A DNA stretch of 64,000 bases. It comes from Selaginella moellendorffii. Taxonomy: Eukaryota; Plantae; Lycopodiophyta. Location: NCBI RefSeq assembly GCF_000143415.4, contig NW_003314291.1:108674-172673 (forward strand), given 5' to 3'. The position numbers were made by a program, and so were the translations under genes. Below the pieces are notes generated by a model that worked only from the letters and a program-made list of their open reading frames with translations, had not been told where the DNA came from and made no database searches. Below, piece by piece: positions 5,803-29,898 of the stretch (position 1 is its first letter; each line of letters begins with the position of its first letter).

Positions 5803-5870
5803 GCGCCCCGCCTCTCCATTCAATCAAACACTGCTCAGCTCTATCCATAGTTAAAGTGCTACTGTTTGCA

Positions 5871-6104
5871 ATGGCGTCCCTTCGTGCTTTCGCTGCTTTC
5901 TTCTTGTGCATGCTCGTTGTTGCAATGGTGGAGCACGCCAATGTGGTGGAAGCTCAATGTGATACAGGCGGTCCCTGTTGCGGTCGTCAGGGTAGAGGAC
6001 GCCGCTGCAACTCGGGCCTGTGCTGCAGCCAGTTTGGCTACTGCGGATCGACATCGGAGTACTGTGGCGCGGGCTGCCAGCGCGGCTATGGGAGATGCAA
6101 CTAA
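5871..6104 (+). CDS. Secreted hevein-like chitin-binding peptide precursor, copy 1 (77 aa, 10 Cys in mature peptide)
   Basis: Hydrophobic signal peptide ending VEA|Q. CGRQ...C...[20 protein letters not shown]...C is the CBM18/hevein signature. TATA box upstream. Confidence 0.93.
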
Positions 6105-7879
6105 ATATTCCATCTAATGTGCTAGACACCTCCAGCATGAAAGTTGCGAGTAATATCTAAATAAGCACTGGTGTCCTCTATTCTCTTTTTATATATATGG
6201 TGTGATGTTTGCTATGTTACCAAGCTGAACGCATTAAAAATCTCATCCAATGCAATCTCCTTCACCAATGACGCCCAATGCACTGCAGGTTAGTATGATG
6301 GATTCCTTCTACTGCATGCCACACTTGATCTTTCTTTTACAGCTTTCATCTGAATTGGACCTGCTAGTTCTCCTTGGCTTGGCATTCAAATGAAGCAATG
6401 AAGAGAAAGGATACAGGAGCAGCCTTCCTTACAATATGTTTATCTCAGATTGAATTTTTATTCAGGGCTTCAATGTAGAAATTGCAGTGATCTGTTGAGT
6501 GCTAGAGTAGTAGCACACATGTAGACGGACATCCTCTCTTTTGCATCAGCTGTTTTTTAAGGCAGACTGTAAGAAGTTATAATGTTCTGTTACGTGGCAC
6601 TTTGCAGGAACATCAGCATTTTTTAGCACATATGAGCATTACTATCACACTAACTCATCTTATAGCTGCGCAGCTAAGAGATGAGCTAGTGCGATAGCAA
6701 TAACAAGTTGAGTCCAACTGGGCTGTGATTCCCATAATAAACATTTTGGTTTTACCAAGCAAGGTTGGCTCTATGGTAGGATAATAGTTGCAATGGCTTC
6801 AATGTCAATATCTTTTTTTGATGATATTCCTATGACATTTACAAGAGATTGGGGATTGTTTGCAGGGCTGATTCAAATTGCCAGACATAGAGCTGGCAGG
6901 AGTGGATTTACTGGAAAGAAAGCTTTTTTATAAAAGTCTTACACCAGCATAAACGTGCAATAGAAAGGTGAATCAAGACTCAAGAATCTAGACAATCTTA
7001 ACACAGATTCTAGGTTACAAATAGCAGTTTCTAGCATTGAAGCCAGATTTTTACAACTCGCTTTTGAGAATGGAAGGGAGAGCACTAAAAAATTAACTTC
7101 TCCAAGGGGAGCATGATCCTGAGCCACCATAGCTTGCTCCACCATTGTAAGCAAGCAAGAAGGCAGAAGAAGATAGGAAAAAGCATTGTGAACCTGAAGA
7201 GTGCGAGAGAAATAAAAGCTACAATGGATAGCCGTTAAAAAACTACACTTCTTGAACCTTGACCACAGTTTTGTCTCTCTACTGTCACAATTACATATCT
7301 ACTATGTATATGATTCAGGAAGGACATAACTTTATGACCAAACCGGAATCAGTTTCTTGACATTTGAACATTGTTTTGAAGTGCACTTCACATATACTTA
7401 AAACTGATTTGGCTGTCCACGTGGATGGGCTGAGCAAGCTAAAAGTGAGGTTTGATTTCTTTTAGCAATGGTGCTGCTGTTACTTTTGAGCTATGGCACA
7501 TGCAACTTTGGAGATGCAAGGACAAGAAGCAGTGTCAATGAAGGTCCATCATGGGAGTGTTACAGAAGTAGAAGGTTGCTGGGATCATGCCACTGGATGG
7601 ACAGCAGCATCTATAAAAAGAATCAAAAAACACTCAAACTTTTAATACTTATTTTAACAATGCTTGTTATGTGAGGTGTGAAAGTTTAACTACTCTCTCT
7701 GTCTCTCTCTCACACATTCCAATTTTGGTGTTTGCCACCTTTGATGTGGGAATAGTGATTGCCAACATTATTTGAGGACCAAGTGGTGAGTGATCACATG
7801 GTTAGCCTAACCTTTTTATTTGAGGACTAGATTGCTCCTGCTTTCATAACATCACTTGCACTATTTTTGCTCCATGTTG

Positions 7880-8000
7880 AAAACTTCCAACTTTTTGACG
7901 CAAACAAGCTTCACTGACTTAGAGATCCTTGCCCTTGATGAGCAGCACAAGGCCTTAGGCAGGTACAAAGAACAAGCTTAAAGTGGTCATTGACTCCTTA
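7880..8000 (+). mobile_element. Truncated Ty3/gypsy integrase C-terminal remnant
   Basis: Homologous to the start of the GPY-motif fragments at 19480-19780 and 25150-25410. Confidence 0.45.
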
Positions 8001-9079
8001 ACTATTTTTGAATTTATTACCTTCATTTCATCTCACCATTTATTACCTTCATCACCACAAAGTCACAACCAAATCACACACCATTCTTTCTACACACCAT
8101 TGCTCATTCTTCATAATAGTTACCCACATTAAGATTATAGCAATTTCATCTACTTCCTATCTATAGTCCTTGATATTCAAAATGAATGGTTATGATAGTG
8201 AAGAGGCCTAAAATTACAAGTCACAACTACTATGAACAATTTAAAGTGTTGAAACATTGCTTATTCAGTGGTGGCATTTATCCATAAATGCCTAGGGCCA
8301 AAGAAAAGTGTTGTCAATTGTCAGTTTGCTCAAGAAAGTGGCTTGGGCATTCTTTATATGCTGGATGATGCTAGCTTAAGAAACATCACTCCAAAAGTGC
8401 TATGCTGTAAAATCTTTATTGTAAATGGTATATTGGATTTCGATAATTTTTACTGCTATCAAAAAGTATTTATGGCTATAGTGGAGTGATATGACATTCT
8501 TGGCCTCATTCATTCCTTCACACTTTCACTCACTTTAGCATTTACCACTATTGGGATCCATCACCATATTACTAAAACTTTTGAGGGTGACATTCCATAA
8601 GTTTGAAAACCTTTCATTTATAATCAAAATTTAGTTTTTGCTATCATTTGGTCTCTTTACCTCTTTCTTTTTCTCTTTTTTTTTCTCATTTTTTCTTCTT
8701 TATTTTTCCAAGTGTCTAGTTTGCATTTAACATTTTTCCTATTGGGTTTTTCTCTCTAGTATTAAATTTCACACTACATTTCGCTTTATTTCTTTTTTTT
8801 TATTTCTCTTCTTTTCTTTTGGTTTTTTATTTTATTTTTCTTTCTTTGTTTGCATTTTTCTCTTTTGGGTGTTTGAACAACATGATTTTTACAACTAGGC
8901 TGTGGGTTCTCTTTTCCCTAGGGCTTACTCACTCACTTGTTGTTGGTCACTTGTTGGGATGCAAAATATAACTTAAAGCACTTAAAATATTTTAATTCCT
9001 AAAATATCCTCATCTCTTTGTATAAAAGCCTAATGAGTGACTAACAGTTATGACATTTAGGGCATTTGGAAGAGCTTGA

Positions 9080-10030
9080 GTTTGTGCAATGAAGGTGATG
9101 AGAATTTGAGTTTGAAAGGTTAGGAAATAGCATTTATCTCCTAATAGTCAAAGTGCTTGAAGAGTGGTAGCATAACATTTCAAGGTATACATAGATAATG
9201 TAAGATTAAAACACTTTTTGTCACAACCTAACATTTGGGGAAAACAAGGTTGGTGGGTTAATGCTTTAATTAAGTTTGATTGCATAAGTTAGAGAAGATC
9301 AATATTGTGGCAAATGTTATAATTCGGAAAGCAAGTCTAGAGTTGATGGTATCTAACACAATAACAGCCTTCTAGAATAATATGTGGATAGTGTATAAGG
9401 ACAATGAATTAATATAGAAGGTGTTGCTAAGGAAAAAGAGACATGAGATATTCTTTAATAAAACAAGCTGCCCAATAAAGAGAAAGTAGATTATATAAAA
9501 TGTAATGGACTCATTTATTATAAACAAACGAGGGTGTATATTCAAAAGAGGAACTAAGGAAAATAACTTTTAAAAAGTGTCATGACAGGCTTTTTAAAGG
9601 ATATAATAAAGTGCCCAAAACTATAAGTTTGCTCAAGAGAAAGTATCATTGACTGAATATAAATAAAAATATACAAAACTATGTAAATACATGCCAAATA
9701 TATTAGTAGTGAAAGTTATGACTAGGTTTATAACAAAACCTCCCAATCCTTGATCATCTATAGAAACTTTTTATAATGAACTTTATCACAAAATTCCCCC
9801 CAAGCACGGGTTGTGAATTGGTTTTTGAAAATGACATAGTTTATACCCACAATAAAAGTGAATGCAAAAGGTATGGTGAAATTATTCTTTGAACAAATGG
9901 TTCAAATATTGGAAATGCTAGAGGAAATTATCTTAGAATAAGATAATATATTCATCAGTAAATTGTAGAGAACTCTTTTGGATGCAATATCATGCAAAAT
10001 TGAAATTCAACACCATCTATCACCATGTAT
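9080..10030 (+). mobile_element. Degenerate Ty3/gypsy pol fragment (RNaseH end to integrase)
   Basis: Frameshifted motifs NIVANV (N.VADALSR), GLIYYKQTRVYI, KKCHD, RKYH..NI.K..QNYVNTC and LPI..H....MNFITK.P. Confidence 0.75.
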
Positions 10031-10179
10031 AAAAAACATTGATACAACTGTAATGTCACATACTAAAATTCATATTATAGTTTTGGCAAAGAAATTAACC
10101 ACCTGTTTACTAGATTCAATGTAAATAATTATAACGTTTTCAATTTAGTTTAAAACTAAAGGTTTTTATATTATGTAAA

Positions 10180-11210
10180 AGACAATGAAACCACTATAAT
10201 ACCCTAAATAGAAATTATTTTATAGTCAGATAAACTAAAGACTATTGCAATTAATTCCAAGGTAAATTATCGTTTGGTTTTAAATATATTTTATTATATA
10301 GTTTCTCTATAAAGTCATATGAATAAAGCAATGATGTTAACACTAAAGCTAGTGTTATGTAGAAATCACAACAATCTACCTTTGTAATAGAGAATAAGAT
10401 GAACAAACATTTTCTAACCCATTTGAATACATTCTGAGTTAATTTTTATTGTAGTAGAATGAAAAATAAGAGATGGTAACTTTAGAAATTCCACAAAATA
10501 AATCTAGACATTCTAAAAAAGATGAGGTGAGTATTTTAATCTCCATTTGAGTTATAGTAATGTATATAATTGTTCTGGTTTCTGTGTAGCAGACCAAAAT
10601 TAAAAAGTTGAACATAAATTTTCTAAAGACATTATAGGGCTACTCATTAAAAATAAGATTACCTTTTAGAATATCAAAAGGTTTTTCAAAATGGATGACA
10701 AGTTTTACTAGTTGTTTAATGAAAGAAGAACTAAAACAAAAGAAGCTTTAAAGTATATTATTGGACATATTTTAAAGGTTAGGCACCTTATGATATTTTC
10801 AGAAGTACAAACAATGAATACTTAGAATGAAAGTACATTGACTATTCATAAGGTTTACAGATCTGGTAAGATATATGGAAACATATAAAAATTATACAGT
10901 TAAATTAAATCATAAATGCATAAAATTATATGAAAAATTATATAAATATTTTTCTAAACTCAATGAAAAATTTATTTTGAATTTTATAATTAACTATATA
11001 ATTAACCATATCTCAAACACACACAGAGATATATATATATATATCAAAAATATATAAAATCCTAAACATTCTACCATATGAAAAACTACAAAGTAACATC
11101 TTTATTAAAAACTATAGAAGACACTAGAGTAAAAAGTATTTATAACACTAATACTTAAACTATATACATTAACAAACTATTTTGAACAGATATATAATTT
11201 TCTTATATTG
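10180..11210. repeat. AT-rich decayed repeat (family B) with residual splice signals; copies at 21490-22440 and 27800-28700
   Basis: Shared collinear text; GAG|GTGAGT...TGTGTAG intron-like segment; no intact ORF. Confidence 0.65.
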
Positions 11211-12188
11211 GAAATCCTATTTATCTAACTGAGTGCTTCATATAGTTAAATTTTGAAAAACTACATCAATGGGTTTGTTGTGCAAGGCTTTGGGTCTGAT
11301 ACACGTCTAGATCAGCTCAAGCTTTTTAGCAATCTTAACTGAACCTGGCAATAGTGATTTTCTTCATCCAAGCATTCACTCCAGTGGGTTGCTACTCCAT
11401 TCTATCATCGCAACACCACTTCTGTCTCAGAGTTAACTGATTCTGCAGCTGGTGTGTGGGCTTGTGCTGCTTTAGCTGCCCGAGTATGTGTTACTGCTGC
11501 CTGAGATTTTGCTTCCACGCAGCAGATCGTGCTTGAGCAATGCTAGGGAATTTCTCCCCAAGCTCGTACAATGCATTGTATAAACCAGCAAACCACAAAC
11601 TTACAAGCGAGCTGCATTTCCATTGGACAGAAGACTGCCTCGCCTGTCTAATGATGCTTTATTTAAATGCAGTCTTTTGAAGATAGCTGGCTGAATATTG
11701 TGCCATGTCCGGGATTTTATAAGATTCTCGACTACATTAAGGAAGGAACCCACTGGTCTTCGTCACTGAAAGCAGTTGGTTTCTGAAACATCCTACCTTC
11801 ACAGGATTCAACCCGCATGCTTCTTACGAAATTTCGCTCAATGGTCAAGCGATAAGGTCTTGTGTCACACTTCAAATGCAAATGTGTCATGGTCGGGTTT
11901 GGCCGCAGACCTGTGTACACTGTGTCACCTTCCTCCAAAATTCAATCTATGGGCGAAATCGAGAGAATGGTAGATCATGGAGCCAAAGTCTTTCCAGAAA
12001 CTGGTAGATCATGGAGCTAAAGTCTTTTACCAAATATGTAATTGTGATGCGAACAAAAATGCGCTCTAGGTTTTCAAAAGTTGTGATGGACTTTGCTTGC
12101 AACCCCCCCGCTATATAAATGCGCCCCGCCTCTCCATTCAATCAAACACTGCTCAGCTCTATCCATAGTTAAAGTGCTACTGTTTGCA

Positions 12189-12422
12189 ATGGCGTCCCTT
12201 CGTGCTTTCGCTGCTTTCTTCTTGTGCATGCTCGTTGTTGCAATGGTGGAGCACGCCAATGTGGTGGAAGCTCAATGTGATACAGGCGGTCCCTGTTGCG
12301 GTCGTCAGGGTAGAGGACGCCGCTGCAACTCGGGCCTGTGCTGCAGCCAGTTTGGCTACTGCGGATCGACATCGGAGTACTGTGGCGCGGGCTGCCAGCG
12401 CGGCTATGGGAGATGCAACTAA
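12189..12422 (+). CDS. Hevein-like peptide precursor, copy 2 (identical protein to copy 1)
   Basis: Same signal peptide and [18 protein letters not shown]...SEYC...GRCN. Confidence 0.93.
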
Positions 12423-13784
12423 ATATTCCATCTAATGTGCTAGACACCTCCAGCATGAAAGTTGCGAGTAATATCTAAATAAGCACTGGTGTCCTCTATT
12501 CTCTTTTTATATATATGGTGTGATGTTTGCTATGTTACCAAGCTGAACGCATTAAAAATCTCATCCAATGCAGTCTCCTTCATCAATGACGCCCAATGCA
12601 CTGCAGGTTAGTGTGGTGGATTCCTTCTACTGCATGGAATAGCTTTTTTAGATGCCACACTTGATCTTTCTTTTACACCAAGGATTGGACGCATGGTGGA
12701 TTGGATCAGCCCGTTGTAAGTCTGCTCTGGAATGAGAGAGTGACTGTAGTAAAACTCAACATTGCATCGCATGTCATGAGCAGGATCAGTCCAGGCATTC
12801 CCAAGCTGCAGTATACAAGGTTACTTTCTTGCTCTTTTATGTTGTCTATACCCTTTCTGGTCCATGGGCAATGTGGTCCAAAATTTTCACAGCCAGAGAT
12901 AGTGACCTGCTTACTGCTACAGTTTGCTAAATTGTGCCCATGTTTGTCCTTGAAACACCAGAAATGTAAACTTTTTTATTAAGTATAAATAGAAGTGAAT
13001 TAGAGAAACTTTTAGTGCAAAATCACAACTATTAAATTAAAGAATATTCTAAAATATACTTTAACATTCTAAATAGATTCTTTACAAGTTTTCAAAACTA
13101 CATTCACCCAACATCTTCTTGAGTGCTACCAAGTTGGACTGTGCAACTTGAGGGCTGGAACTTCTCAATGGAATACACATTGCACAGCTTTGGTTTTGGG
13201 CTTTGTTTAGTTGGTGCTAGCTGATAATGAAGGAGGGGGTTGCAAGCCGATAAAGTTGCAATTTGTCAAGACTGTTGCAAACCCAGCAACTTAGAGGCAT
13301 TGGCCAAGCCTCAATTAGATGTGTCCCCCACTTGGAAATTTCTCCCCTTGAAAACCCCAATTCCAATAGCATAACTGGTGGGGTGCATGGAACACCTTTC
13401 ATGCATGGAACTCCCCCCGCGGTCTTGCATATAATTTTTCCCCCACTCAATTAAATTCTTTTTATTTTATAAGTAATTGAAAATCTTCCCCCCAAGGGGA
13501 CACATGGAACCCTGCCCTTAGGCAACACAAATTAGTCTTGCTGCCCATAAAGGCAATTCCACACCTGTATAACAAGGGAATTTCCCTCTCATCAACAAGA
13601 CTCTCCATCTCTTAAGATTCAATTTGCACAGGATATTACAAACCTACAACATTGTTGAAACACTTAGGTGAGGCTCAGCCTAACCTCAAAAATTCAAATT
13701 ACAAAGCTTAAATACAAGAAAACTTTTAGTTGAATTATTAGGCTTAACTAATTAGGCTTTTAGCTGAATTCTAAACTATCCATC

Positions 13785-14030
13785 ATAACATAGGCTGTAT
13801 GCACCACTTGTTATCTCCAGAAAATCCCCCGCTACCTCTATCCGGCCTTAACCTTGGCCGCAGCATCACCCAGGAAGCAGCTCCTGGGTGTTGCTTCACC
13901 ATGCCAGGATGTTGATCATGCAGCTGTAGTAATTGTAGCCCGGGGAGTTGATTGCCCCGGCAAAATAGCCGCCCGCAATCGACGTGAAGTTGCAGCATAT
14001 AGCACGCGAATCACCGCCATGGCTTAGTGC
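13785..14030 (-). pseudogene. PPR pseudogene fragment (C-terminal PLS/E region)
   Basis: ALSHGG...FTSIAGGYF...YYSCMINILA resembles SACSHAG...HYxCMVDLLxRAG. Paralogous to 31270-31490. Confidence 0.55.
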
Positions 14031-14044
14031 AATACCAAGGAAAG

Positions 14045-14950
14045 AATATCTAAAAGGATTAGCCAATAGGTAACTTTCGATACTCATAATCATATTCACA
14101 ACAATATCAAAAGCAATTAAAATTATCAATAATCAATACCATCAAATCAAATTGAACAATAGTTACCTCAAATTGCCACTCAACTCATTTGAACATTAAT
14201 ATAGTTGTAAACTAGCAAAATGCACAAATGTTAACAACACAAATATATAGCCAAATCATCAATATTATTTTTATTAATATTAGCAAAACTAAATGTCAAT
14301 ATCTAAAGAAAGCTCAATTAATCACCAACTATCTAAATAATCACAGATGGAAAATTTAACTTTCTTAATATACCCATAGAAAAACATTTCATCTCACTTT
14401 AATATTAACTTTAATAATATCAATATCAAGATATTACTTTAATATCATCAACAATAAAACAAAGTTAAAAGAAAATAAGAGTGAATCACTACTCAACACC
14501 AAGCTAACCAAAGTTGAAAGTACTATATTAGTATCTGAAACCAATCTTTCAATAATATCTAGCTACACATTAATAAAGAGTGAATATTCATGTCCACAAC
14601 TCAATGTAATCCAATACCATAGATTAAATACAACGATATAATGAAGATGGAACTAACATGTCAATATGAAAAAACTATATGAATATAACAAGATGATCAT
14701 TTGCAATGCCATATGACAAACAAACTCATCACTGCTAAATAATAATTTACCTAAGCATAATGCTTAGTTACAAAGCAACTAACTATCATTTTTCAACCTG
14801 CCTTCATATAATTTAGCATCAAACTCATGCAATAAAAAGCAACAATGTAGGTAACAATATATAGAATATGGATAAGTATGAATAAAACAACTACTCAAAT
14901 CTAATCTTACAATAATAAACCCATCTATATAACTCTTGTTATTATATATG
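14045..14950. repeat. AT-rich decayed repeat (family A), second copy
   Basis: Collinear with 2490-3350. Confidence 0.75.
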
Positions 14951-16054
14951 GATAAATCCTCTGAAACATTAGATAAGTCAGAGAAAACGGAAAGCAAAGC
15001 AAGAATTACCTAAGACTGGCCTCGGTTCTTGAGTATGAATAGGCTCCTCAACATTGATGCTCCTCCTTGTCGCATGTGGTGTCCATTTGATCCGTCAACC
15101 TCTGGAGCACGGCTCCACGGCAACCGACCTGTCCAACTATGCTCTCTCATCGGTTCTCCTCGACTTCTCTTCCGCCTCAGCCTTCATCTTTCAACACTCC
15201 TCATCTAGCCTCCAAAGCTTTGCATCTGATACATGTCTAGATCAGCTCGAGCCTTTTAACAATCTCAACAGAGCCTCGAAGGCTGGCAAGAAGATATTGT
15301 TGGTGATTTTTTTTCATCAAAGCGTTCCCTCCTGTGGGTTGCTGCTCCCTTCTATCATCTCAACACCACTTCTGTCTCAGAGTTGACTGATTGCGCAGCT
15401 GGTGTGTGGGCTTGCGCTGCTTTAGCTGCCCGAGTAGCTGTTACTGCTGCTTGAGATTTTGCTTCAACCACAAACTTACAAGCGAGCTGCATTTCCATTG
15501 CACAGAAGACTGCCTCGCACCCTGTCTAATGATGCTTTATTTATGCAGTCTTTTGAAGATAGCTGGCTGAATATTGTGCCATGTCCCTACATTAGGAAGG
15601 AGCATGGTCTTCGTGGTTTCCAAAACAATCTGAGCTTGAGTTTACTGATTTGGTTGATGTAACCTACCTTGTTCTTACGGAGCTTCGCTCAATGGTCAAG
15701 CGATGAGGTCTTGTGTCACACTTCAAATGCAAACAGACCTGATAGCGCGCCTTCCTCCAGATTTTCGTCTTGTGGTGCAAAAAATTCAATAGGGTTTGTC
15801 GCCCTAGAGAGAGTGGTAGATCATGGAACTAAAGTCTTTCCAGAAACTTGTAGATCATGGAGCTAAAGTCTTTTCACGTGATTATAGCAACTATGTAATT
15901 GCAATGCGAACAAAACTGTGGTCTAGGTTTCCAAAAGTTGTGATGTAACCCAAGGACTTCGCTTGCAAGCCCCCCGCTATATAAATGCGCCCCGCCTCTC
16001 CATTCAATCAAACACTGCTCAGCTCTATCCATAGTTAAAGTGCTACTGTTTGCA

Positions 16055-16291
16055 ATGGCGTCCCTTCGTGCTTTCGCTGCTTTGTTCTTGTGCATGTTCG
16101 TTGTTGCAATGGTGGAGCATGCCAATGTGGTGGAAGCTCAGGCAGCGTGTGCAACCCGTCCCTGTTGCGGTCGTCAGGGTGGAGGAGGCCGCTGCAACCC
16201 GGGCCTGTGCTGCAGCCAGTTTGGCTACTGCGGATCGACATCTGATTTCTGTGGCGCGGGCTGCCAGCGCGGCTATGGGAGATGCAACTAA
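16055..16291 (+). CDS. Hevein-like peptide precursor, copy 3 (78 aa, variant [10 protein letters not shown]...SDFC)
   Basis: Signal peptide, hevein signature, 10 Cys; TATA box upstream. Confidence 0.93.
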
Positions 16292-17622
16292 ATATTCCAT
16301 CTAATGTGCTAGACACCTGCAACATGAAAGTTGCGAGTAATATCTAAATAAGCACTGGTGTCCTTTATTCTCTTTTTATATATATGGTGTAATGTTTGCT
16401 ATGATACCAAGCTGAACGCATTAAGCATCTCATCCAATGATCTCCTTCGTCATGACGCCCAATGCGCTGCAGGTTAGTGTGGTGGATTCCTTCCACTGCA
16501 TGGAATAGCTTTCTCTAGATGCATCTTTTACAGCATTCATCTGAATTGGACCTGCTATTTCTCCCTTGGCTTAAGACAGATTGACTTTTTATTCAGGGCT
16601 TCAATGTAGAAATCGCACTGATCTGTTGAGTGCTAGAGCAGCAGCATCCTCTCTTTGCATCGGCTGTTTTTTAAGGCAGACTGTACGAATTTATAATGTT
16701 CATGGTCGTAACATGTTATGTGGCACTTGAGCATTGCTATCGCACTAGCTTATCTCTTAGCTGCACAGCTAAGAAAGAAGTTGAGTCCAACCAGAAGGAC
16801 TGGGCTGTGATTCACATAATAAACATTTTGGTTTTACCAAGCAAGGTTGGCTCTATCACTTGTGATGCACAGCCGTCTGGGCGCTTTATCTAGACTGGTA
16901 GGATTGTAGTTGCAATGGTTTCAATGTCAATATCTTTTATTTGATGATGTTACTATGACAACAAGAGATTGGGGCTGATTCAAATTGCCAGGCATAGAGC
17001 TAGCAGGAGTGGATTTACTGGAAAACAAGCTTCTTATAAAAATCATCCACCCGCAAAAACGTGCAATAAAAAGGAATCAAGACTCAAGAATCTAACACAA
17101 ATTCTAGCTTACAACTAGGCCATAGCCATTGAAGCCATGATCTTCTTTTGTTTTCCAACTTCAATTAATAACTTACGTTCATTTTTGAGGAATTACAGCT
17201 TGCTTTTGAGACTGGAAGGGAGAGCACAAAACAATTAACAGCTCCAAGGCCTAGGAATCCTGTGCTGGTGGCACATGATCCTGAGCCACCATGGCATGCT
17301 CCGCCATTGTAAGAAGGAGAGAATTGCGAACTGGAAGGAGTATGAGAGAAATAAATGCTGCAATGGATAGCCGTTGAAAAACCACACATCCAACCTTCTA
17401 AAGACCTTGACCGCAATAGGGCCAATGTCTTTCCAGAAACTGGTAGATCATATCTTTTCACGTTCAATGTGATCATATAGCAAATACGTAATTGCGATGC
17501 AAACAAAAGTGCGCTCTAGATTTTCAAAAGTTGTGATGTAACCCAAGGACTTCGCTTGCTATATAAATGTACCCCACCTCTCCATTCAATCTCTATCCAT
17601 AGTTAAAGTGCTACTGTTTGCA

Positions 17623-17859
17623 ATGGCGTCCCTTCGTGCTTTTGCTGCTTTGTTCTTGTGCATGTTCGTTGTTGCAATGGTGGAGCACGCCAATGTGGTG
17701 GAAGCTCAGGCAGCGTGTGCAACCCGTCCCTGTTGCGGTCGTCAGGGTGGAGGAGGCCGCTGCAACCCGGGCCTGTGCTGCAGCCAGTTTGGCTACTGCG
17801 GATCGACATCTGATTTCTGTGGTGCGGGCTGCCAGCGTGGCTATGGGAGATGCAACTAA
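17623..17859 (+). CDS. Hevein-like peptide precursor, copy 4 (identical protein to copy 3)
   Basis: Same translation as copy 3 with synonymous differences; upstream region shortened. Confidence 0.9.
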
Positions 17860-19479
17860 ATATTCCATCTAATGTGCTAGACACTGCAACATGAAAGTAG
17901 TAATATCTAAATAAGCACTGGTGTCCTCTATTCTCTTTTTATATATATGGTGTAGTGTTTGCTATGTTACCAAGCTGCATCCAATGCAATCTCCTTCATC
18001 AATGACGCCCAATGCACTGCAGGTTAGTATGGTGGATTCCTTCTACTGCATGGAAAGCTTTTTTAGATGCCACACTTGATGTTTCTTTTACAGCTTTCAT
18101 CTGAATTGGACCTGCTAGTTTTCCCTTGGCTTGGCATTCAAATTAAGCAATGAGGAGAAAGGATACAGGAGCCGCCTTCCTTACAATATGTTTATCTGGT
18201 GTATGACCTCAGACTGACTTTTTATTCAGGGCTTCAATGTAGAAATTGCAGTGATCTGTTGAGTGCTAGAGCAGTAGCACACATGTAGACGGACGTCCTC
18301 TCTTTTGCATCAGCTGTTTTTTATGGCAGACTGTAAGAAGTTATAATGTTCTGTTACGTGGCACTTTGCAGGAACATCAGCATTTTTTAGCACATATGAG
18401 CATTACTATCACACTATGCGCAACTAAGAGATGAGCTAGTGCGATAGCAATAACAAGTTGAGTCCAACCTGAAGGAGTGGGCTGTGATTCCCATAATAAA
18501 CATTTTGGTTTTACCAAGCTGGTAGGATAATAGTTGCAATGCAATATCTTTTTTTGATGATATTCCTTAGAACTGGCAGGAGTGGATTTACTGGAAAGAG
18601 AGCTTTTTATTAAAGTCTTTGGCAAAAACGTGCAATAGAAAAGAATCTAGACAATCTTAACACAAATTCTAGGTTACAAATAGCAATTATTGAAGCCCGC
18701 TTTTGAGAATGGAAGGGAGAGCACTAAGAAATTAACTTCTCCAAGGGGAACATGATCTTGAGCCACCACCATTGTAAGCAAGCAAGAAGGCAGAAGAAGA
18801 GATAGGCAAAAGCATTGTGAACCTGAAGAGTGCAAGAGAAATAAAAGCTACAATGGATAGCTGTTAAAAAACTACACTTCTTAAACCTTGACCATAGTTT
18901 TGTCTCTCTACTGTCACATATCTGCTATGTATATGATTCATGAAGGACATAGCTTTATGACCAGACTGGAATCAGTTTCTTGACATTTGAACATTGTTCT
19001 CACTTCACAGATACTTAAAAAGTGATTTAACTGTCCACGTGGATGGGCTGAGCAAGCTAAAAGTGAGGTTTGATTTCTTTTAGCAATGGCGCTGCTGTTA
19101 CTTTTGAGCTATGGCATGTGGGTGTGATCTGCTTGTGGCACTGTGGAGATGAGCAGCAGCATCTATGAAGGTCCATCACAGGAGTGTTACACGAGCAGAA
19201 GTTGCAGGGGTCATGCCACTGGATGAAGCTTCTATCTTCTACTTATTTTGACAATGCTTGCTATATAAAGTGTGAAAATTTAACTACCCAAATACTTTCT
19301 CTCTCTCTCTCTTTCACACTCCAATTTTGGTGTCTACCACCTTTGATGTGGGAATAGTGATTGCCAGTGAGAACAACCTAGCCTCTATATTTAAGGACCA
19401 AGTGAGTCTAGCCTCTTTATTTGAGGACTAGATTGCTCCTGCTTTCATAACATTACTTGTGCTATCTTTGCTCCATGCT

Positions 19480-22440: not shown

Positions 22441-23226
22441 TATCATCTCAACACCACCTCTCTCTCAGAGTTAACTGATTCTGCAGCTGGTGTGTGGGCT
22501 TGTGCTGCTTTAGCTGGCCGAGTAGGTGTTAGTGCTACCTGATATTTTGCTTCCATACAGCAGATCGTGCTTGAGCAATGGTAAGGAAATCATAACCTAT
22601 TTTGGTTTCTCCCCAAGCTAACCAGCAAACCACAAACTTACAAGCGAGCTCCATTTCCATTGCACAGACGACTGCCTCGCACTCTGTCTAATGATTTTTT
22701 ATTTAAATGCAGTCTTTTGAAGATAGCTGGCTGAATATTGTGCCATGTCCGGGATTTTATAAGATTCTCAACTACATAAGGAAGGAACCCACCGGTCTTC
22801 GTCACTGAAAACAGTGGTTTCTGAAACATCCTACCTTCAAAGGATTCAACCACGCATGCTTCTTACGAAACTTCGCTCAATGGTCAAGCGATAAGGTCTT
22901 GTGTCACACTTCAAATGCAAATGTGTCATGGTCGGGTTTCCGCAGACCTGTGTACACTGTGTCACCTTCCTCCAAAATTCAATCTATGGGCGAATTCGAG
23001 AGACTGGTAGATCATGGAGCTAAAGTCTTTCCAGAAACTGGTAGATCATGGAGCTAAAGTCTTTTAGCAAAATATGTAATTGCGATGCGAACAAAACTGC
23101 GGTCTAGGTTTTCAAAAGTTGTGATGGACTTTACTTGCAACCCCCCCGCTATATAAATGCGCCCCGCCTCTCCATTCAATCAAACACTGCTCAGCTCTAT
23201 CCATAGTTAAAGTGCTACTGTTTGCA

Positions 23227-23460
23227 ATGGCATCCCTTCGTGCTTTCGCTGCTTTCTTCTTGTGCATGCTCGTTGTTGCAATGGTGGAGCACGCCAATGT
23301 GGTGGAAGCTCAATGTGGTACAAGCGGTCCCTGTTGCGGTCGTCAGGGTGGAGGACGCCGCTGCAACTCGGGCCTGTGCTGCAGCCAGTTTGGCTACTGC
23401 GGATCGACATCTGATTACTGTGGCGCGGGCTGCCAGCGCGGCTATGGGAGATGCAACTAA
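23227..23460 (+). CDS. Hevein-like peptide precursor, copy 5 (77 aa, [18 protein letters not shown]...SDYC)
   Basis: Signal peptide, hevein signature, 10 Cys. Confidence 0.93.
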
Positions 23461-25149
23461 ACATTCCATCTAATGTGCTAGACACCTCCAGCATGAAAGT
23501 TTTGAGTAATATCTAAATAAGCACTGGTGTCCTCTATTCTCTTTTTATATATATGGTGTGATGTTTGCTATGTTACCAAGCTGAACGCATTAAAAATCTC
23601 ATCCAATGCAGTCTCCTGCATCAATGACGCCCAATGCACTGCAGGTTAGTATGGTGGATTCCTTCTACTGCATGGAAAGCTTTTTTAGATGCCACACTTG
23701 ATCTTTCTTTTACAGCTTTCATCTGAATTGGACTTGCTAGTTCTCCCTTGGCTTGCATTCAAATGAAGCAATGAAGAGAAAGGATACAGGAGCGGCCTTC
23801 CTTACAATATGTTTATCTCAGATTGAATTTTTATTCAGGGCTTCAATGTAGAAATTGCAGTGATCTGTTGGCTAGAGCAGTAGCACACATGTAGACGGAC
23901 ATCCTCTCTTTTGCATCAGCTGTTTTTTAAGGACTGTATGAAGTTATAATGTTCTGTTACGTGGCACTTTGCAGGAACATCAGCATTTTTTAGCACATAT
24001 GAGCATTACTATCACACTAACTCATCTTATAGCTGCGCAGCTAAGAGATGAGCTAGTGCGATAGCAATAACAAGTTGAGTCCAACCTGAAGGACTGGGCT
24101 GTGATTCCCATAATAAACATTTAATATTCCTATGACATTTACAAGAGATTGGGGATTTTTTGCAGGGCTGATTCAAATTGCCAGACATAGAGCTGGCAGG
24201 AGTGGATTTACTGGAAAGAAAGCTTTTTATAAAAGTTTTACACTGGCAAAAACGTGCAATAGAAAGGTGAACCAAGACTCAAGAATTTAGACAATATTAA
24301 CAAAATATCTAGTCTAGCATTGAAGCCAGATTCTTACAACTCGCTTTTGAGAATGGAAGGGAGAGCACTAAAAAAATAACTTTTCCAAGGAGAGCATGAT
24401 CCTGAGCCACCATAGTTTGCTCCACCATTGTAAGCAAGCAAGAAGGCAGAAAAAGATAGGAAAAAGCATTGTGAACCTGAAGAGTGCGAGAGAAATAAAA
24501 GCTACAATGGATAGCCGTTAAACAACTACACTTCTTGAACCTTGACCACAGTTTTGTCTCTCTACTGTCACAATTACATATCTACTATGTATATGATTTA
24601 GGAAGGACACAACTTTATGACCAAACTGGAATCAGTTTCTTGACATTTGAACATTGTTTTGAAGTGCACTTAAAAAGTGATTTGGCTGTCCACGTGGATG
24701 GGCTGAGCAAGCTAAAAGTGAGGTTTGATTTCTTTTAGCAATGGTGCTGCTGTTTACTTTTGAGCTATGGCACATGCAACTTTGGAGATGCAAGGACAAG
24801 CAACAGTGTCAATGAAGGTCCATCATGGGAGTGTTACAGAAGTAGAAGGTTTCTGGGATCATGCCACTGGATGGACAGCAGCATCTATAAAAAGAATCAG
24901 ATAATTATGTGAAGTGTAAAAGTTTAACTACCCAAATACTCTCTCCATCTCTCTCTCACACACTCCAATTTTAGTGTCTGCCACCTTTGATGTGGGAATA
25001 GTGAATGCCAGTGAGAACTTAGCCTCTTTATTTGAGGACCAAGTGGTGAGTGATCACATGGTTAGTCTAACCTCTTTATTTGAGGACTAGATTGCTCCTG
25101 CTTTTATAACATCACTTGCACTATTTTTGCTCCATGTTGCAAACTTCAA

Positions 25150-25410
25150 ACAAGCTTCACCAACCTAGAGATCCTTGCCCTTGATGAGCAGCAGCTTCTT
25201 GTTGCAAAGAATAAGCTTAAGGTGGTCATTAACTCTAAAGTTCCCAATTCAACTCTCTTTTCTCTTAAGCAGCTCGTTCTTCTCAAGGAGCTCACACCCT
25301 CCTCCAAGTGCTTTTCATGGTGGCTGGGCCCTTACTTCATCCAGTGCCAAGTGGAGGGTGGTTCTTACATACTCGTAAACAAGATTGGCTATGAGCTTCT
25401 ATATACTCAC
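25150..25410 (+). mobile_element. Ty3/gypsy integrase C-terminal (GPY/F) remnant
   Basis: LKQLVLLKELTPSSKCFSWWLGPYFIQCQVEGGSYILVNKIG. Confidence 0.65.
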
Positions 25411-26679
25411 TTTTTTTTTCACCTCTCCTCTTCTGTTTTTAGGTTTTGCTATATTGGTTTACAAGTTCCAACTTGAATTTTAGCTGCAAGGCTACATTAA
25501 CTCCTTTTGTATGCGAGCTTTTACAAATTCTCAATGAATCCTCAATTATTTTTGAATCTATTACCTTCATTTCATCCCACCATTTATTACTTTCATCACC
25601 ACAAAGTCACAACCAAATCACACACCATTCACTCTACATACCATTGCCCATTCTTCATGACAGTTACCCACATTGGGATCATAACAATTTCATCTACTTT
25701 CTATCCATAGTCCTTGATATTCATATCACTCCACTATAGCCACAAATACCTTTTAATAGCAGTAAAAATTATCCAAATCTAATATACCATTTATAATAAA
25801 GATTTTACAACATTGTAACATATTAGTACTTTTGGAGTGGTGTTTCTTAAGCTAGCATTATCCAACATATAAAGAATGCCCAAGCCACTTTTTTGAGCAA
25901 ATTGACAATTGATGACACTTTTCTTTGGCCCTAGGAATTTATGGATAAATGCCACCACTAAGTAAGCAATGTTCCAACACTTTAAATTGTCTATAGTAGT
26001 TATGACTTGTAATTTCAAACCTCTTCACTATCATAATCATTCATTTCCACATTTTTGGCCTCATTCATCCCTTCACACTTTCACTTACATTAAAAGCATG
26101 GAAGAGTCTATGCATGATCACAGACTGATAAACTAGCTTATCAAGTGAAAGAAGTGAGAAGCTCAAAAGAATTAAATTCTTAAATTGTTTACCACTATTG
26201 AGATTCATCACTATATTACTAAAACTTTTGAAGATGACATTCCATTTATAATCAAAGTTAGTTTTTGCTATCATTTAGTCTTTTTACCTCTTTCTTTTTC
26301 TCTTTTTGTTTCATTTCTATTTTTTCATCTTTATTTTTCCCAAGTGTCTAGTTTGCATTTAACATTTTTCCCATTGGGTTTTTCCCTCTAGTATTAAATT
26401 CCACACTACATTTCTCTTTATTTCTTTGTTTTTATTTCTCTTCTTTTCTTTTGGTTTTTTATTTTATTTTTCTTTCTTTTCTTGCATTTTTCTCTTTTGG
26501 GCAACCTGACTTCTACAACTAGGCTTGTGGGTTCTCTTTTCCCTAGAGTTTATTCACTCACTTGTTGTTGGTCGCTTATTGGGATGCAAAATATAACTTA
26601 AGGCACTTAAAATATTTTTATTCTTAAAATATCCTCATCTCTTTGTATAAAAGCCCAATGAGTGAATAATAGTTATGAC

Positions 26680-27650
26680 ATTTAGAGCATTTGGAAGAGT
26701 TTGAATTTGTGCAATGAAGGTGATAAGAGTTTGAGTTAGAAAGGTTGGGAAATAGCATTTATCTCCTAATAGTCAAAGTGCTTGAAAAGTGGTAACATAA
26801 CATTTCAAAGTATACATAGATAATATAGGAATGAAATACTTCTTATCACAACCTAACATTCGGGGAAAACAAAGTTGGTGGGTTAATGCTTTAATTAAGT
26901 TTGATTGCATAAGTTAGAGAATATCAATATTGTGGCAAATGTTATAAGTCGGAAAGCAAATCTAGAATTGGTGGTATCTAACACAATAACAACCTTCTAG
27001 AATAATATGTGGATAGTGTATAAGGATAATGAATTAGCATAGAAGGTGTTGCTAAGGAAAAAAGAGACATGAAATGTTCTTTAACAAGACAAGTTGCCCA
27101 ATAAAGAGAAAGTAGGTTATATAAAATGTAATGGACTCATTTATTATAAACAAACAAGGGTATATATTCCAAAAGAGGAACTAAGGAAAATAACTTTAAA
27201 AAAGTGTTATGACAAGCTTTTTAAAAGATATAATAAAGTGCCTAAGATTATGTGTTTGTTCAAGAGAAAGTATCATTGACTGAATATAGGTAAAGATATA
27301 CAAAACTATGTAAATACATACCCAATTATATTAGTAGTGAAAGTTATGACTAAAACTAATGGAGTTTATAACAAAACCTCCCAATCCTTGATCATCCATG
27401 GAAACTTTTTATAATAAACTTTATCACAAGATTGCCCCTAAGCAAGGGTGGTGAATTGGTTTTTACCCACAATAGAAATGAATGCAAAAGGTATGGTGAA
27501 GTTGTTCATTGAACAAATGGTTCAAATATGGGAAATGCTAGAGGAAATTATCTTAGACTAAAATAATACACTCACTAGTAAGTTGTAGAGAACTCTTTTG
27601 AATGCAGTATTGTGCCAAACTAAAATTCAACACCATCTATGACCATGTAT
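26680..27650 (+). mobile_element. Degenerate Ty3/gypsy pol fragment (duplicate of 9080-10030)
   Basis: NGLIYYKQTRVYIPKEELRKITLKKCYD; LPILDHPW...NFITRLP. Confidence 0.75.
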
Positions 27651-29664
27651 AAAAAACATTAATACAACTGTGATGCTACATATTGAAATTCATATTATAG
27701 TTTTGGCAAAGAAACTAACCACCTTTTTACTTGATTCAATGTAAATAACTATGATATTTTCAATTTAGTTTAAAATTAAAGGTTTTTATATTGTGTAAAA
27801 GACAATGAAACCACTATAATACCCTAAATAGAAATTATTTTATAATCAGATAAACTAAAGACTATTGCAATTAATTCCAAGGTAAATTATTGTATGGTTT
27901 TAAACATATTTTACTATATAGTTTCTCTATAAATTCATATGAATAAAGTAGTGATGTTAACACTAAAGCTAGTGTTATGTAGAAACCACAACAATCTACC
28001 TTTGTAATAGAGAATAAGATGAACAGACATTTTCTAACCCATGTGAATACATTCTGAGTTAATTTTTATTGTAGTAGAATGAAAAATAAGATATGGTAAC
28101 TCTAGAAATTCCACCAAATAAATCTAAACACTTTATAAAAGGTGAGGTGAGTATTTTTAATTTCCATTTGAGTTATAGTAATATATATAATTGTTCTAGT
28201 TCTTGTATAGAAGGCCAAAATTAAAAAGTTGAACATAAATATTCTAAAAGATATTATAAAGCTAGTCATTAAAAATAAGATTACCCTTCAAAATATCAAA
28301 GGGTTTTTCAAAATGGATGACAAGTTTTATTAGTTGTTTAATGGAAGAAGAATTAAAACAAAAGAAGCTTTAAAATATATTGTTGGACATGTTTTAAAGG
28401 TTAGGCACTTTGTGATGTCTTTAGAAGTACGAATGTTGAATACCTAGAATGAAAGTACATTGACTATTTTTCTAAACTACATGAAAAATGTATTTTGAAT
28501 TTTATAATTAACTATATAATTAACCATATCTCAAACACACACAGATATATATATATATAAAAACTATATAAAATTCTAAACATTCTACCATCTTTATTAA
28601 AAACTAGAGTAAAAAGTATTTATAACACTAATACTTAAACTATATACATTAACAAACTATTTTGAACAGATATATAGTTTTCTTATATTGGAAATCCTAT
28701 TTGAGTGCTTCATATAGTTAAAATTTGAAAAACTACATCAATGGGTTTGTTGTGCAAAGCTTTGGGTCTGATACACGTCTAGAGCAGCTCAAGCTTTTTA
28801 GCAATCTTAACTGAACCTAGCAATAGTGATTTTCTTCATCAAAGCATTCACTCCTGTGGGTTGCTACTCCATTCTATCATCTCAACACCACTTCTGTCTC
28901 AGAGTTAACTGATTCTGCAGCTGGTGTGTGGGCTTGTGCTGCTTTAGCTGCCGGAGTATGTGTTACTGCTGCCTGAGATTTTGCTTCCACGCAGCAGATC
29001 GTGCTTGAGCGATGCTATGGAAATCATAACCTATTTTGGTTTCTCCCCAAGCTCGTACAATGCATAGTATAAACCAGCAAACCACAAACTTACAAGCGAT
29101 CTGCATTTCCATTGCACAGAAGACTGCCTCGCCTGTCTAATGATGCTTTATTTAAATGCAGTCTTTTGAAGATAGCTGGCTGAATATTGTGCCATGTTTA
29201 TAAGATTCTCGACTACATTAAGGAAGGAACCCACCGGTCTTCGTCACTGAAAGCAGTTGGTTTCTGAAACATCCTACCTTCACAGAATTCAACCGCATGC
29301 TTCTTACGAAACTTCGCTCAATGGTCAAGCGATAAGGTCTTGTGTCACACGTCAAATGCAAATGTGTCATGGTCGGGTTTGGAGACCTGTGTACACTGTG
29401 GCACCTTCCTCCAAAATTCAATCTATGGGCGAAATCGAGAGACTGGTAGATCATGGAGCCAAAGTCTTTCCAGAAACTGGTAGATCATGGAGCTAAAGTC
29501 TTTTAGCAAATATGTAATTGCGATGCGAACAAAACTGCGCTCTAGGTTTTCAAAAGTTGTGATGGACTTTGCTTGCAACCCCCCCGCTATATAAATGCGC
29601 CCCGCCTCTCCATTCAATCAAACACTGCTCAGCTCTATCCATAGTTAAAGTGCTACTGTTTGCA

Positions 29665-29898
29665 ATGGCGTCCCTTCGTGCTTTCGCTGCTTTCTTCTTG
29701 TGCATGCTCGTTGTTGCAATGGTGGAGCACGCCAATGTGGTGGAAGCTCAATGTGGTACAAGCGGTCCCTGTTGCGGTCGTCAGGGTAGAGGACGCCGCT
29801 GCAACTCGGGCCTGTGCTGCAGCCAGTTTGGCTACTGCGGATCGACATCTGAGTACTGTGGCGCGGGCTGCCAGCGCGGCTATGGGAGATGCAACTAA
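29665..29898 (+). CDS. Hevein-like peptide precursor, copy 6 (77 aa, [18 protein letters not shown]...SEYC)
   Basis: Signal peptide, hevein signature, 10 Cys. Confidence 0.93.

What the first reader, a model, noticed from the sequence alone, without database searches (positions are those of the whole stretch)
5871..29898. Six-gene array of cargo-free hevein-like peptides with an unusual N-terminal 10-Cys framework
Seen: six intronless genes encode a 28-aa signal peptide and a 49-50 aa mature peptide starting with Gln and ending in CN-stop, with no hinge, Barwin or chitinase domain and no C-terminal propeptide. The mature peptide has the 8-Cys hevein core plus two extra Cys at the N-terminus ([28 protein letters not shown]; C-x5-CC or C-x4-CC). 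The S-x-F-G-Y-C-G-x4-Y/F chitin-binding motif is intact, and net charge is about +4 to +5 by R/D/E count. Established: known 10-Cys hevein-like peptides (WAMP, EAFP, Ee-CBP types) place the fifth disulfide elsewhere, and many precursors carry a C-terminal domain. Inference: a distinct 10C subfamily with an N-terminal disulfide loop and possible pyroglutamate, expanded as an antifungal cluster.
Basis: partly seen in the sequence, partly recalled or inferred. Interest (0 to 1): 0.85.

Follow-up and report, generated by a model that had tools for sequence, protein, structure and literature searches.

The report
Tandem ten-cysteine hevein peptide genes
Six neighbouring, expressed genes of the spikemoss Selaginella moellendorffii each encode a small secreted chitin-binding (hevein-type) peptide with an extra pair of cysteines at its front end and no tail, a variant of a well-known plant defence peptide family that public annotations have missed or mis-spliced.

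Summary
Window 5871-29898 holds exactly six intact, intronless + strand ORFs. Each encodes a 28-aa signal peptide and a 49-50 aa hevein/CBM18 domain (Pfam PF00187, E about 1e-11). Each has 10 Cys and stops directly after Cys-Asn.

The genome is Selaginella moellendorffii. Five more intact family members lie elsewhere in the v1.0 assembly. Four of them are annotated as three-exon models that splice past the real stop codon. None of the correct 77/78-aa sequences is in a 15-billion-protein collection.

RNA reads cover the coding regions without splice joints. One run's contigs show very high depth over the coding regions only. No chitinase or barwin-like exon lies in the window.

The extra Cys pair (C-x3-5-C, then Cys I) with a preceding Pro is kept in all Selaginella paralogs. 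It is also present in a tail-bearing Selaginella gene and in sequences from the fern Adiantum and the water lily Nymphaea. Reviews place the fifth disulfide of known 10-Cys heveins at or near the C-terminus.

The N-terminal disulfide loop, pyroglutamate and antifungal role remain inferences.

Verdict: a new variant of a known kind, of moderate interest. Tail-less precursors are not unique; grasses and potato have them too.

The parts
5871..6104 (+). g1: hevein-like precursor, 77 aa (signal 5871-5954, mature 5955-6101, stop 6102-6104); mature N-terminus QCDTGGPCC
   Evidence: ORF and translation; PF00187 E 1.6e-11; AlphaFold2 model of the mature part has pLDDT 83.5 and a hevein fold
12189..12422 (+). 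g2: CDS identical to g1
   Evidence: The 977-bp unplaced S. moellendorffii scaffold GL378307.1 is 99.6% identical to window 11949-12682.
16055..16291 (+). g3: 78-aa precursor; mature N-terminus [10 protein letters not shown] (C-x4-CC)
   Evidence: An X1 contig matches 16091-16157 exactly at word depth 19,513.
17623..17859 (+). g4: same protein as g3, with 4 synonymous differences
   Evidence: X1 and X5 coverage
23227..23460 (+). g5: 77-aa precursor; mature N-terminus QCGTSGPCC
   Evidence: Raw RNA reads laid on g2 carry the variants shared by g5 and g6 (G33S and a silent change in codon 62).
29665..29898 (+). g6: 77-aa precursor; mature N-terminus QCGTSGPCC; net charge +5
5794..5799 (+). TATA box (CTATATAAAT) 77 nt upstream of the g1 ATG. 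The same element lies at 12112, 15978, 17560 (at -63), 23150 and 29588 for g2 to g6.
   Evidence: the last 120 nt before each ATG are near-identical, so each copy has its own core promoter.
5254..14030 (.). Two-gene block (g1-g2 plus flanks), collinear with 22594-31489 (g5-g6) at 90-94% identity
   Evidence: Self-blastn. The array is a segmental duplication of a two-gene block, with the g3-g4 pair between the two copies.
22594..31489 (.). Second copy of the two-gene block (g5-g6)

Best explanation
The region is a tandem array of six independently transcribed, intronless genes of Selaginella moellendorffii. It arose by duplication of a two-gene block, with a further gene pair between the copies. 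Each gene encodes a two-domain precursor. The first domain is a 28-aa ER signal peptide, probably cut after V-E-A. The second is a 49-50 aa basic, Gly/Cys-rich hevein-type (CBM18) domain. This domain is released as it stands, because the stop codon follows the last Cys-Asn. With no C-terminal propeptide, which acts as a vacuolar sorting signal in barley lectin and class I chitinases, the peptide most likely leaves by default secretion to the apoplast. Eight Cys form the canonical hevein core (I-IV, II-V, III-VI, VII-VIII). The conserved Ser and three aromatic residues form the GlcNAc/chitin-binding face. The two additional Cys, one 3-5 residues before a Pro-Cys that abuts Cys I, most likely pair with each other. 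That would close a small N-terminal loop, a fifth disulfide in a place not described for hevein-like peptides. The N-terminal Gln probably cyclises to pyroglutamate. The likely role is binding chitin of fungi, or possibly arthropods, as a constitutive and in some samples very abundant defence peptide. Shown: the gene structure, the Pfam domain, the predicted hevein fold (AlphaFold2 model), expression, absence of splicing and cargo, and conservation of the Cys framework. Inferred: the cleavage site, disulfide map, pyroGlu, localisation, chitin binding and antifungal activity.
For: Six intact ORFs with PF00187 at E about 1e-11. The AlphaFold2 model has pLDDT 83.5 and superposes on pokeweed lectin, Hevea CBM18 and WGA at 0.8-0.9 A over 34-36 residues. 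PDB sequence matches run to WGA, vaccatide, hevein and morintide. Raw stranded RNA reads (X4, X5) cover the CDSs in the orientation expected for + strand RNA and show no joints. X1 contigs cover only the transcribed parts, at single-contig word depths up to 19,513, against 35-47 summed depth for a neighbouring expressed fragment. Every copy has a TATA box at -77 or -63. No GH19 or DPBB exon is in the window. All 10 Cys are invariant across 11 Selaginella loci, while the loop residues between them vary and the N-terminal loop changes length. Mature-region dN/dS is 0.3-1.3, against 0.1-0.9 for the signal peptide among close paralogs. The same Q...C-x3-4-P-C-C-G frame occurs in tail-bearing Smo446133, in Adiantum and in Nymphaea, and the MV[ED][ASC]-Q junction aligns between Selaginella and Adiantum.
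Against: There is no peptide-level evidence. Raw-read depth in X4 and X5 is low (3-9 reads at the informative sites), so rare spliced isoforms cannot be excluded. X1 is only guessed to be RNA. The signal-peptide cleavage site is assigned by the -3/-1 rule and by alignment, not by a predictor. No expression data under infection were examined.
Confidence: 0.68

Rival explanations
1. The N-terminal stretch with the first extra Cys is a short propeptide or is trimmed. The mature product would then be an ordinary 8-Cys (or 9-Cys) hevein peptide, and the '10C framework' would exist only in the precursor.
For: Canonical hevein peptides start one or two residues before Cys I, and the segment CGRQ... 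here looks like such a start (alignments begin at residue 8-9). pLDDT of the first ten residues is lower, at 69.
Against: Both extra Cys are invariant across 11 Selaginella loci and are present in Adiantum and Nymphaea, although the residues between them change and the loop length varies from 3 to 5. Cutting between the two adjacent Cys would leave an odd number of Cys. The conserved V-E-A / V-E-S / V-D-C junction followed by Gln fits signal peptidase directly.
Confidence: 0.1
2. The extra Cys do not form a local loop. Instead they rewire the knot by pairing with core Cys, or they make intermolecular disulfides (dimers), which would give a different topology from hevein.
For: Adjacent Cys-Cys pairs allow alternative pairings. 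The connectivity was not tested here.
Against: The core Cys spacing, the chitin-binding motif and the predicted fold are canonical. The variable loop length (x3 to x5) is easiest to tolerate in a self-contained loop.
Confidence: 0.12
3. The v1.0-style three-exon models are right. In that case transcripts splice from inside the hevein domain to downstream exons, giving longer proteins with non-conserved tails and an incomplete domain.
For: Four paralogs are annotated this way (SELMODRAFT_425957, 403798, 406253, 403727), and PMC10378081 accepts the three-exon structure for two of them, 425957 and 403798.
Against: All four genomic loci contain the uninterrupted ORF ending ...YGRCN-stop. The annotated tails are unrelated low-complexity readings of 3' flanking DNA. 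Reads and contigs cross the proposed donor sites and the stop codon contiguously, and no joint was reported. The three annotated donor positions differ between paralogs.
Confidence: 0.04
4. The peptides are chitin or GlcNAc binders, but their biological role is not antifungal defence. They could act against arthropods or nematodes, bind chito-oligosaccharides to modulate signalling, or serve as storage or structural peptides.
For: No functional data exist. Hevein domains serve several roles in lectins. Very high constitutive depth in one run fits a storage-like or tissue-specific product as well.
Against: Small basic hevein-like peptides that have been assayed are typically antifungal (PMC5374622, PMC5093130, PMC10136942). 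Tandem expansion with variable inter-Cys loops is typical of defence peptide families.
Confidence: 0.2

Closest known systems
8C hevein-like peptides without protein cargo (ginkgotides, morintides, vaccatides; PMC5093130, PMC5374622, PMC5478723)
   Same: Secreted single hevein domain, no chitinase or barwin cargo, the canonical 8-Cys core, the Ser plus three aromatic chitin-binding residues, and N-terminal Gln in several members.
   Different: Those have 8 Cys and a 15-20 aa C-terminal tail that is cleaved off (a three-domain precursor). Here there are 10 Cys, no tail at all, and a last inter-Cys loop of 6 residues (GCQRGYGRC) instead of 3.
10C hevein-like peptides: EAFP1/2 (Eucommia), Ee-CBP (Euonymus), WAMPs (wheat)
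   Same: Ten Cys, a hevein core and basic charge. EAFPs also start with pyroGlu.
   Different: [quoted passage not shown] Here both extra Cys precede Cys I. Ee-CBP carries a chitinase cargo and WAMPs carry a C-terminal prodomain.
S. moellendorffii hevein 'merolectins' Smo425957 and Smo403798 (Alsolami et al. 2023, PMC10378081)
   Same: Direct paralogs of the six genes (82-83% protein identity to g1; 90-91% to g3), with the same signal peptide and the same 10-Cys frame in the genomic DNA.
   Different: They were published as three-exon proteins of 118-124 aa with non-conserved tails that lack part of the domain. The 10-Cys pattern, the true stop codon and this six-gene array were not described.
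Fungal-type CBM18 modules
   Same: The C-terminal half, C-x3-C-x6-C with GCQxxYGxC, matches many fungal CBM18 repeats better than the angiosperm GCQSQC form.
   Different: The fungal proteins are mostly multi-domain and have no C-x3-5-CC N-terminal extension. None was found in 150 representative hits or in 80 metagenome loci.

Membership tests
Hevein / CBM18 (Pfam Chitin_bind_1, PF00187) | Profile match above the curated gathering score | tested here: met
   43.5-46.2 bits against a cut-off of 27.8 for all six
Hevein / CBM18 (Pfam Chitin_bind_1, PF00187) | Eight-Cys core C-x8-C-x4-CC-x5-C-x6-C-x3-5-C-x3-C | tested here: met
   The core spacing is C-x8-C-x4-CC-x5-C-x6-C-x3-C-x6-C. Only the last loop is longer (6 rather than 3 residues), as in many fungal CBM18 modules.
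Hevein / CBM18 (Pfam Chitin_bind_1, PF00187) | Chitin-binding Ser plus three aromatic residues (hevein S19, W21, W23, Y30) | tested here: met
   [10 protein letters not shown]-[ED]-[YF] is invariant in all six.
Hevein / CBM18 (Pfam Chitin_bind_1, PF00187) | Hevein fold | tested here: met
   AlphaFold2 pLDDT 83.5. Foldseek probability 1.0 and rmsd 0.8-0.9 A to 1ulk, 1ulm, 4mpi and WGA.
Hevein / CBM18 (Pfam Chitin_bind_1, PF00187) | Binds chitin or GlcNAc oligomers | not testable with these tools
   Needs a chitin-bead pull-down or ITC/NMR titration.
Described 10C hevein-like peptides (EAFP, Ee-CBP, WAMP types) | Ten Cys in the mature peptide | tested here: met
   Ten Cys in the 49-50 aa after the predicted signal cleavage
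Described 10C hevein-like peptides (EAFP, Ee-CBP, WAMP types) | Fifth disulfide involves the C-terminus (within it, or C-terminus to a knot loop) | tested here: not met
   There is no extra Cys after Cys I, and both extra Cys precede it. The definition is taken from PMC5093130 and PMC10136942.
Described hevein-like peptide precursors (all subfamilies) | Three-domain precursor with a C-terminal domain (tail or cargo) | tested here: not met
   The stop codon directly follows Cys-Asn in all six genes and in five other loci. No splice joints were seen. No cargo exon is present.
Secreted peptide (classical ER signal) | N-terminal signal peptide with a -3/-1 small-residue cleavage site | tested here: inconclusive
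   The n-region is MASLR, followed by a 15-residue hydrophobic core and V-E-A before Gln. The junction aligns with Smo446133 and Adiantum. No signal-peptide predictor was available.

The most novel reading that the evidence does not exclude
These genes may belong to an old, so far undescribed lineage of hevein peptides in vascular plants, seen in a lycophyte, a fern and a water lily. Its mark would be a fifth disulfide closing a 3-5 residue loop directly in front of Cys I (Q-x0-2-C-x2-4-P-C-C-G). The ancestral form would carry a Ser/Thr/Ala-rich tail after Cys-Asn (Adiantum) or Cys-Tyr (Smo446133). Selaginella would have lost the tail by a stop codon placed exactly at the presumed processing site, then expanded the tail-less form to at least 11 loci, producing a ready-made, highly expressed apoplastic peptide.
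Probability: 0.45. Interest if true: 0.5.

Novelty: new variant of a known kind. Interest (0 to 1): 0.4.

Why it matters
Hevein-like peptides are a classic scaffold for plant antifungal defence and for peptide engineering, and their classification (6C, 8C, 10C; three-domain precursors) rests almost entirely on seed plants. This locus shows three things in a lycophyte. First, a 10-Cys arrangement not covered by that classification. Second, a precursor with no C-terminal domain. Third, a family of at least 11 intact genes that the reference annotation either lacks or mis-splices, so that none of the correct sequences is present in a 15-billion-protein collection. It gives concrete masses and sequences for a peptidomics test and corrects gene models used in a published lectin survey. 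It does not change how hevein domains are understood to work.

Tried and rejected
1. Disulfide connectivity from the AlphaFold2 model: the coordinates are not exposed to scripts, so the C-C pairing could not be read.

2. The search of 1.84 billion representatives was dominated by multi-domain fungal CBM18 proteins. Among the 150 listed, the only one with the N-terminal extension is the 59-aa product of the array's own g1/g2-type gene.

3. A metagenome scan (80 loci) found hevein domains but none with the C-x2-7-CC extension.

4. The ENA contig L005 (P0215) has the RCALGPCC start, but the ORF ends after ...EYFG. It is broken or has an intron, its organism is unknown, and it was not pursued.

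5. Nymphaea P0259 is a 76-aa fragment held only in UniRef, so its C-terminus could not be read.

6. W-box counts upstream (one per 500 nt, against 0.31 per 500 nt in the window as a whole) are too few to argue for defence regulation.

7. Antisense ORFs overlapping every gene (for example 5851-6138 on the - strand) were rejected as by-products of GC-rich Gly/Cys/Arg codons.

8. Assembly duplication as the source of the array was rejected. The copies differ by 5-18% in their flanks and are embedded in different intergenic DNA.
Full report
**What is in the sequence**

The ORF list for 5-31 kb shows six + strand ORFs: 5871-6104 (g1), 12189-12422 (g2), 16055-16291 (g3), 17623-17859 (g4), 23227-23460 (g5) and 29665-29898 (g6). 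Their products align without trouble.
- Residues 1-28 are MASLRAFAA[FL]FLCM[LF][13 protein letters not shown].
- A 49-aa (g1, g2, g5, g6) or 50-aa (g3, g4) Gly/Cys/Arg-rich part follows. It starts with Gln and ends Cys-Asn-stop.
- All six exceed the Pfam Chitin_bind_1 gathering score (E 5e-12 to 4e-11).
- tblastn of the peptides against the whole window finds exactly these six copies and no fragments.
- g1 and g2 have identical CDSs. g3 and g4 differ by four synonymous changes. g5 and g6 differ from g1 by 6 and 3 nucleotides.

**Organism and state of annotation**

The closest database proteins are Selaginella moellendorffii models. A 977-bp unplaced scaffold of the v1.0 assembly (GL378307.1) is 99.6% identical to window 11949-12682. 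The window is therefore S. moellendorffii, and the array was essentially unassembled in v1.0.

Four dispersed paralogs are annotated there as proteins of 113-135 aa with unrelated tails: SELMODRAFT_425957, 403798, 406253 and 403727. In every case the genomic DNA holds an uninterrupted 78-aa ORF ending ...YGRCN-stop. The annotated 'introns' start at three different points inside the domain.

A fifth, more divergent and unannotated paralog lies 1.35 kb downstream of Smo425957 (L002:11587-11823). It is 63% identical to g1, its mature part starts QGECANGPCC and it ends SCN-stop.

None of the correct 77/78-aa sequences is in the 15-billion-protein collection.

Alsolami et al. 2023 (PMC10378081) listed ten hevein-like genes from v1.0, including Smo425957 and Smo403798. 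They described those two as three-exon merolectins with a non-conserved tail, and mention only the eight conserved Cys.

**Expression and transcript structure**

One read-laying run covered window 12000-17999.
- Raw paired RNA reads of two 2026 runs (X4, X5; about 12% of each was read) lie on g2, g3 and g4, with the first mate on the - strand. That is the orientation expected of + strand RNA in most stranded libraries.
- The reads on g2 carry G33S and a silent change in codon 62. These are the g5/g6 states.
- Reads and contigs on g3 carry D64A and A68V. That combination matches the Smo403727 locus.
- An X2 contig matches Smo425957 (F7V, L10F, F15L).

So several paralogs are transcribed. No joint was reported, and reads cross the donor sites used by the v1.0 models.

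In run X1 (Logan contigs, RNA by guess), contigs cover only the coding and UTR parts and none of the intergenic DNA. That pattern speaks for RNA. Single contigs reach word depth 19,513 (16091-16157, no mismatch). A neighbouring expressed fragment at 13.0-13.4 kb has a summed depth of only 35-47. Depth summed over short unitigs is a poor measure, but the family is clearly abundant in that sample.

Each copy has the same CTATATAAAT box 77 nt (63 nt in g4) before the ATG, and a near-identical 5' leader. tblastn with 15 hevein proteins that carry GH19 or DPBB cargo found nothing beyond the hevein domains in the window. The next genes downstream are an LRR receptor kinase, an F-box protein, a FYVE protein, two PPR proteins and a LOB-domain fragment.

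**Array structure**

Self-comparison shows that 5254-14030 (g1, g2 and flanks) is collinear with 22594-31489 (g5, g6) at 90-94% identity. The g3-g4 pair (86% identical flanks) lies between them. The coding regions are more conserved than their flanks. g1 and g2 have 0 differences in 234 nt, against about 5% in the flanks.

Pairwise Nei-Gojobori estimates give a mature-peptide dN/dS of roughly 0.3-1.3. The signal peptide gives 0.1-0.9 among close paralogs. All changes fall at non-Cys positions. The numbers are small. They fit the usual pattern of defence-peptide families (fixed scaffold, variable loops) but do not prove positive selection.

**Fold and family**

An AlphaFold2 model of mature g1 was built with a 66-row alignment. 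Its mean pLDDT is 83.5 (69 for residues 1-10). Foldseek places it on pokeweed lectin C/D2, Hevea CBM18, WGA, WAMP-1a and hevein, at 0.8-0.9 A over 34-36 residues with probability 1.0. The E-values are weak only because the domain is tiny.

Sequence search of the PDB gives the same family, and the alignments start at residue 8-9 of the mature peptide. The first eight residues are thus an addition to the canonical domain.

The core spacing is canonical up to Cys VII. The last loop has six residues (GCQRGYGRC), as in many fungal CBM18 repeats, rather than the angiosperm GCQSQC.

**The extra Cys pair**

Relative to hevein, the additional Cys are the first Cys of the mature peptide and the Cys directly before Cys I. 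They give C-x5-CC (g1, g2, g5, g6) or C-x4-CC (g3, g4 and the five v1.0 loci).

Both Cys, and the Pro before the CC, are invariant in all 11 Selaginella loci. The residues between them vary and the loop changes length.

The same frame occurs in four further sequences.
- Smo446133 starts QQCSQPCCG and has a C-terminal tail.
- An intact Adiantum capillus-veneris gene (L004:9618-9953, - strand) starts QACSQPCCG. After ...YGRCN it carries a 30-aa Ser/Thr/Ala-rich tail.
- The Nymphaea colorata fragment A0A5K1FXH8 starts QCQNGPCCG.
- One environmental contig carries RCALGPCC.

The junction before the Gln aligns as V-E-A, V-E-S and V-D-C. This supports signal-peptidase cleavage right before Gln. It also explains the apparent eleventh Cys of Adiantum as position -1 of the signal peptide.

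The extension was absent from every other hit among the 150 best representatives of 1.84 billion clusters. It was also absent from all remaining hits of two profile searches and from 80 metagenome loci.

With eight core Cys in canonical positions, parity and the variable loop length make a local C-C loop the simplest reading. This pairing is an inference, because I could not read the model's coordinates.

**Comparison with the literature**

Wong et al. 2016 (PMC5093130) state that the additional disulfide of 10C hevein-like peptides lies entirely at the C-terminus or links the C-terminus to a knot loop. Kini et al. 2017 (PMC5374622) say all three subfamilies have three-domain precursors. The 2023 review PMC10136942 lists only the EAFP, WAMP and Ee-CBP types. 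Full-text searches for hevein-like peptides in Selaginella, ferns or lycophytes, or with a fifth disulfide at the N-terminus, found no description of this pattern.

The 10-Cys arrangement is therefore undescribed as far as these libraries reach. The tail-less architecture is less special. Grass genomes (Panicum, Urochloa, Digitaria) and potato carry annotated 61-73 aa signal-plus-domain precursors that end 0-1 residues after the last Cys, though none appears to have been characterised.

**Mechanism**

Shown:
- the genes are secretory-type, single-domain, tail-less hevein genes;
- they are transcribed without splicing;
- the Cys scaffold is conserved.

Inferred from established knowledge of the family:
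- signal cleavage before Gln, followed by pyroGlu formation;
- four canonical disulfides plus an N-terminal loop;
- binding of chitin through Ser25, Phe27, Tyr29 and Tyr/Phe36 (g1 mature numbering);
- inhibition of hyphal growth.

C-terminal propeptides of barley lectin and class I chitinases are vacuolar sorting signals. Their absence here suggests default secretion to the apoplast. The tail-bearing relatives continue directly after Cys-Asn (Adiantum) or Cys-Tyr (Smo446133). The Selaginella stop codon sits exactly where a tail would be removed. This suggests the tail was lost through a stop codon arising at that site.

**Verdict**

The array is a new variant of a known kind. It is useful for plant peptide specialists and for correcting the Selaginella annotation, but it does not change how hevein domains are understood.

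Noticed in passing
L002:10001-10237, L003:10001-10237, L087:8001-8237, L088:8001-8237 (S. moellendorffii v1.0 scaffolds GL377644.1, GL377566.1, GL377570.1): Four annotated genes (SELMODRAFT_425957, 403798, 406253, 403727) are modelled with introns that skip the true stop codon. The genomic DNA encodes intact 78-aa 10-Cys hevein precursors ending CN-stop.
   Followed up: yes
L002:11587-11823: Unannotated divergent paralog (63% identical to g1) lying 1.35 kb downstream of Smo425957. It has the same architecture: QGECANGPCC ... SCN-stop.
   Followed up: partly
L004:9618-9953 (-) and L004:10001-10297 (+), Adiantum capillus-veneris CM043957.1: Two head-to-head copies of the fern relative lie about 50 bp apart. 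The minus-strand copy has a full signal peptide and is not annotated as such. The annotated plus-strand copy (GOP47_0016815) lacks most of its signal peptide, so it looks like the truncated arm of an inverted duplication.
   Followed up: partly
L006:6001-6688 (SELMODRAFT_446133): Tail-bearing Selaginella relative (QQCSQPCCG...). Read without splicing, it ends 22 aa after the domain. The annotated 170-aa model again uses a downstream exon of doubtful reality.
   Followed up: no
window 13183-13222 and 15112-15184: Short segments where many RNA reads match only in part, with consistent loose ends on both sides. They look like fragments of, or repeats shared with, genes expressed elsewhere. A related ORF motif (...GSTATDLSN.ALSSVLLDFSSASAFIF...) recurs at 4834-5028 and 15054-15386.
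   Followed up: no
window 34354-36897 (+), 39581-40804 (-), 52082-52939 (-), 53219-55039 (+), 55126-57210 (+), 62484-63212 (+): Neighbouring genes by Pfam: an LRR receptor-like kinase, an F-box/KIB1-4 beta-propeller protein, a FYVE zinc-finger protein, two PPR proteins (one with an E motif) and a LOB-domain fragment.
   Followed up: partly
P0229, P0260, P0268, P0269, P0274, P0276, P0286 (potato, Urochloa decumbens and five unnamed; the Panicum and Digitaria members of the grass group are P0241, P0310 and P0315): Annotated 61-73 aa hevein precursors with 8 Cys end 0-1 residues after the last Cys. Two-domain precursors therefore occur in angiosperms, although reviews describe only three-domain ones.
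   Followed up: no
window 5851-6138 (-) and the equivalent antisense ORFs of each copy: Long antisense and alternative-frame ORFs overlap every hevein CDS. They are a composition effect of the GC-rich Gly/Cys/Arg codons, not separate genes.
   Followed up: partly
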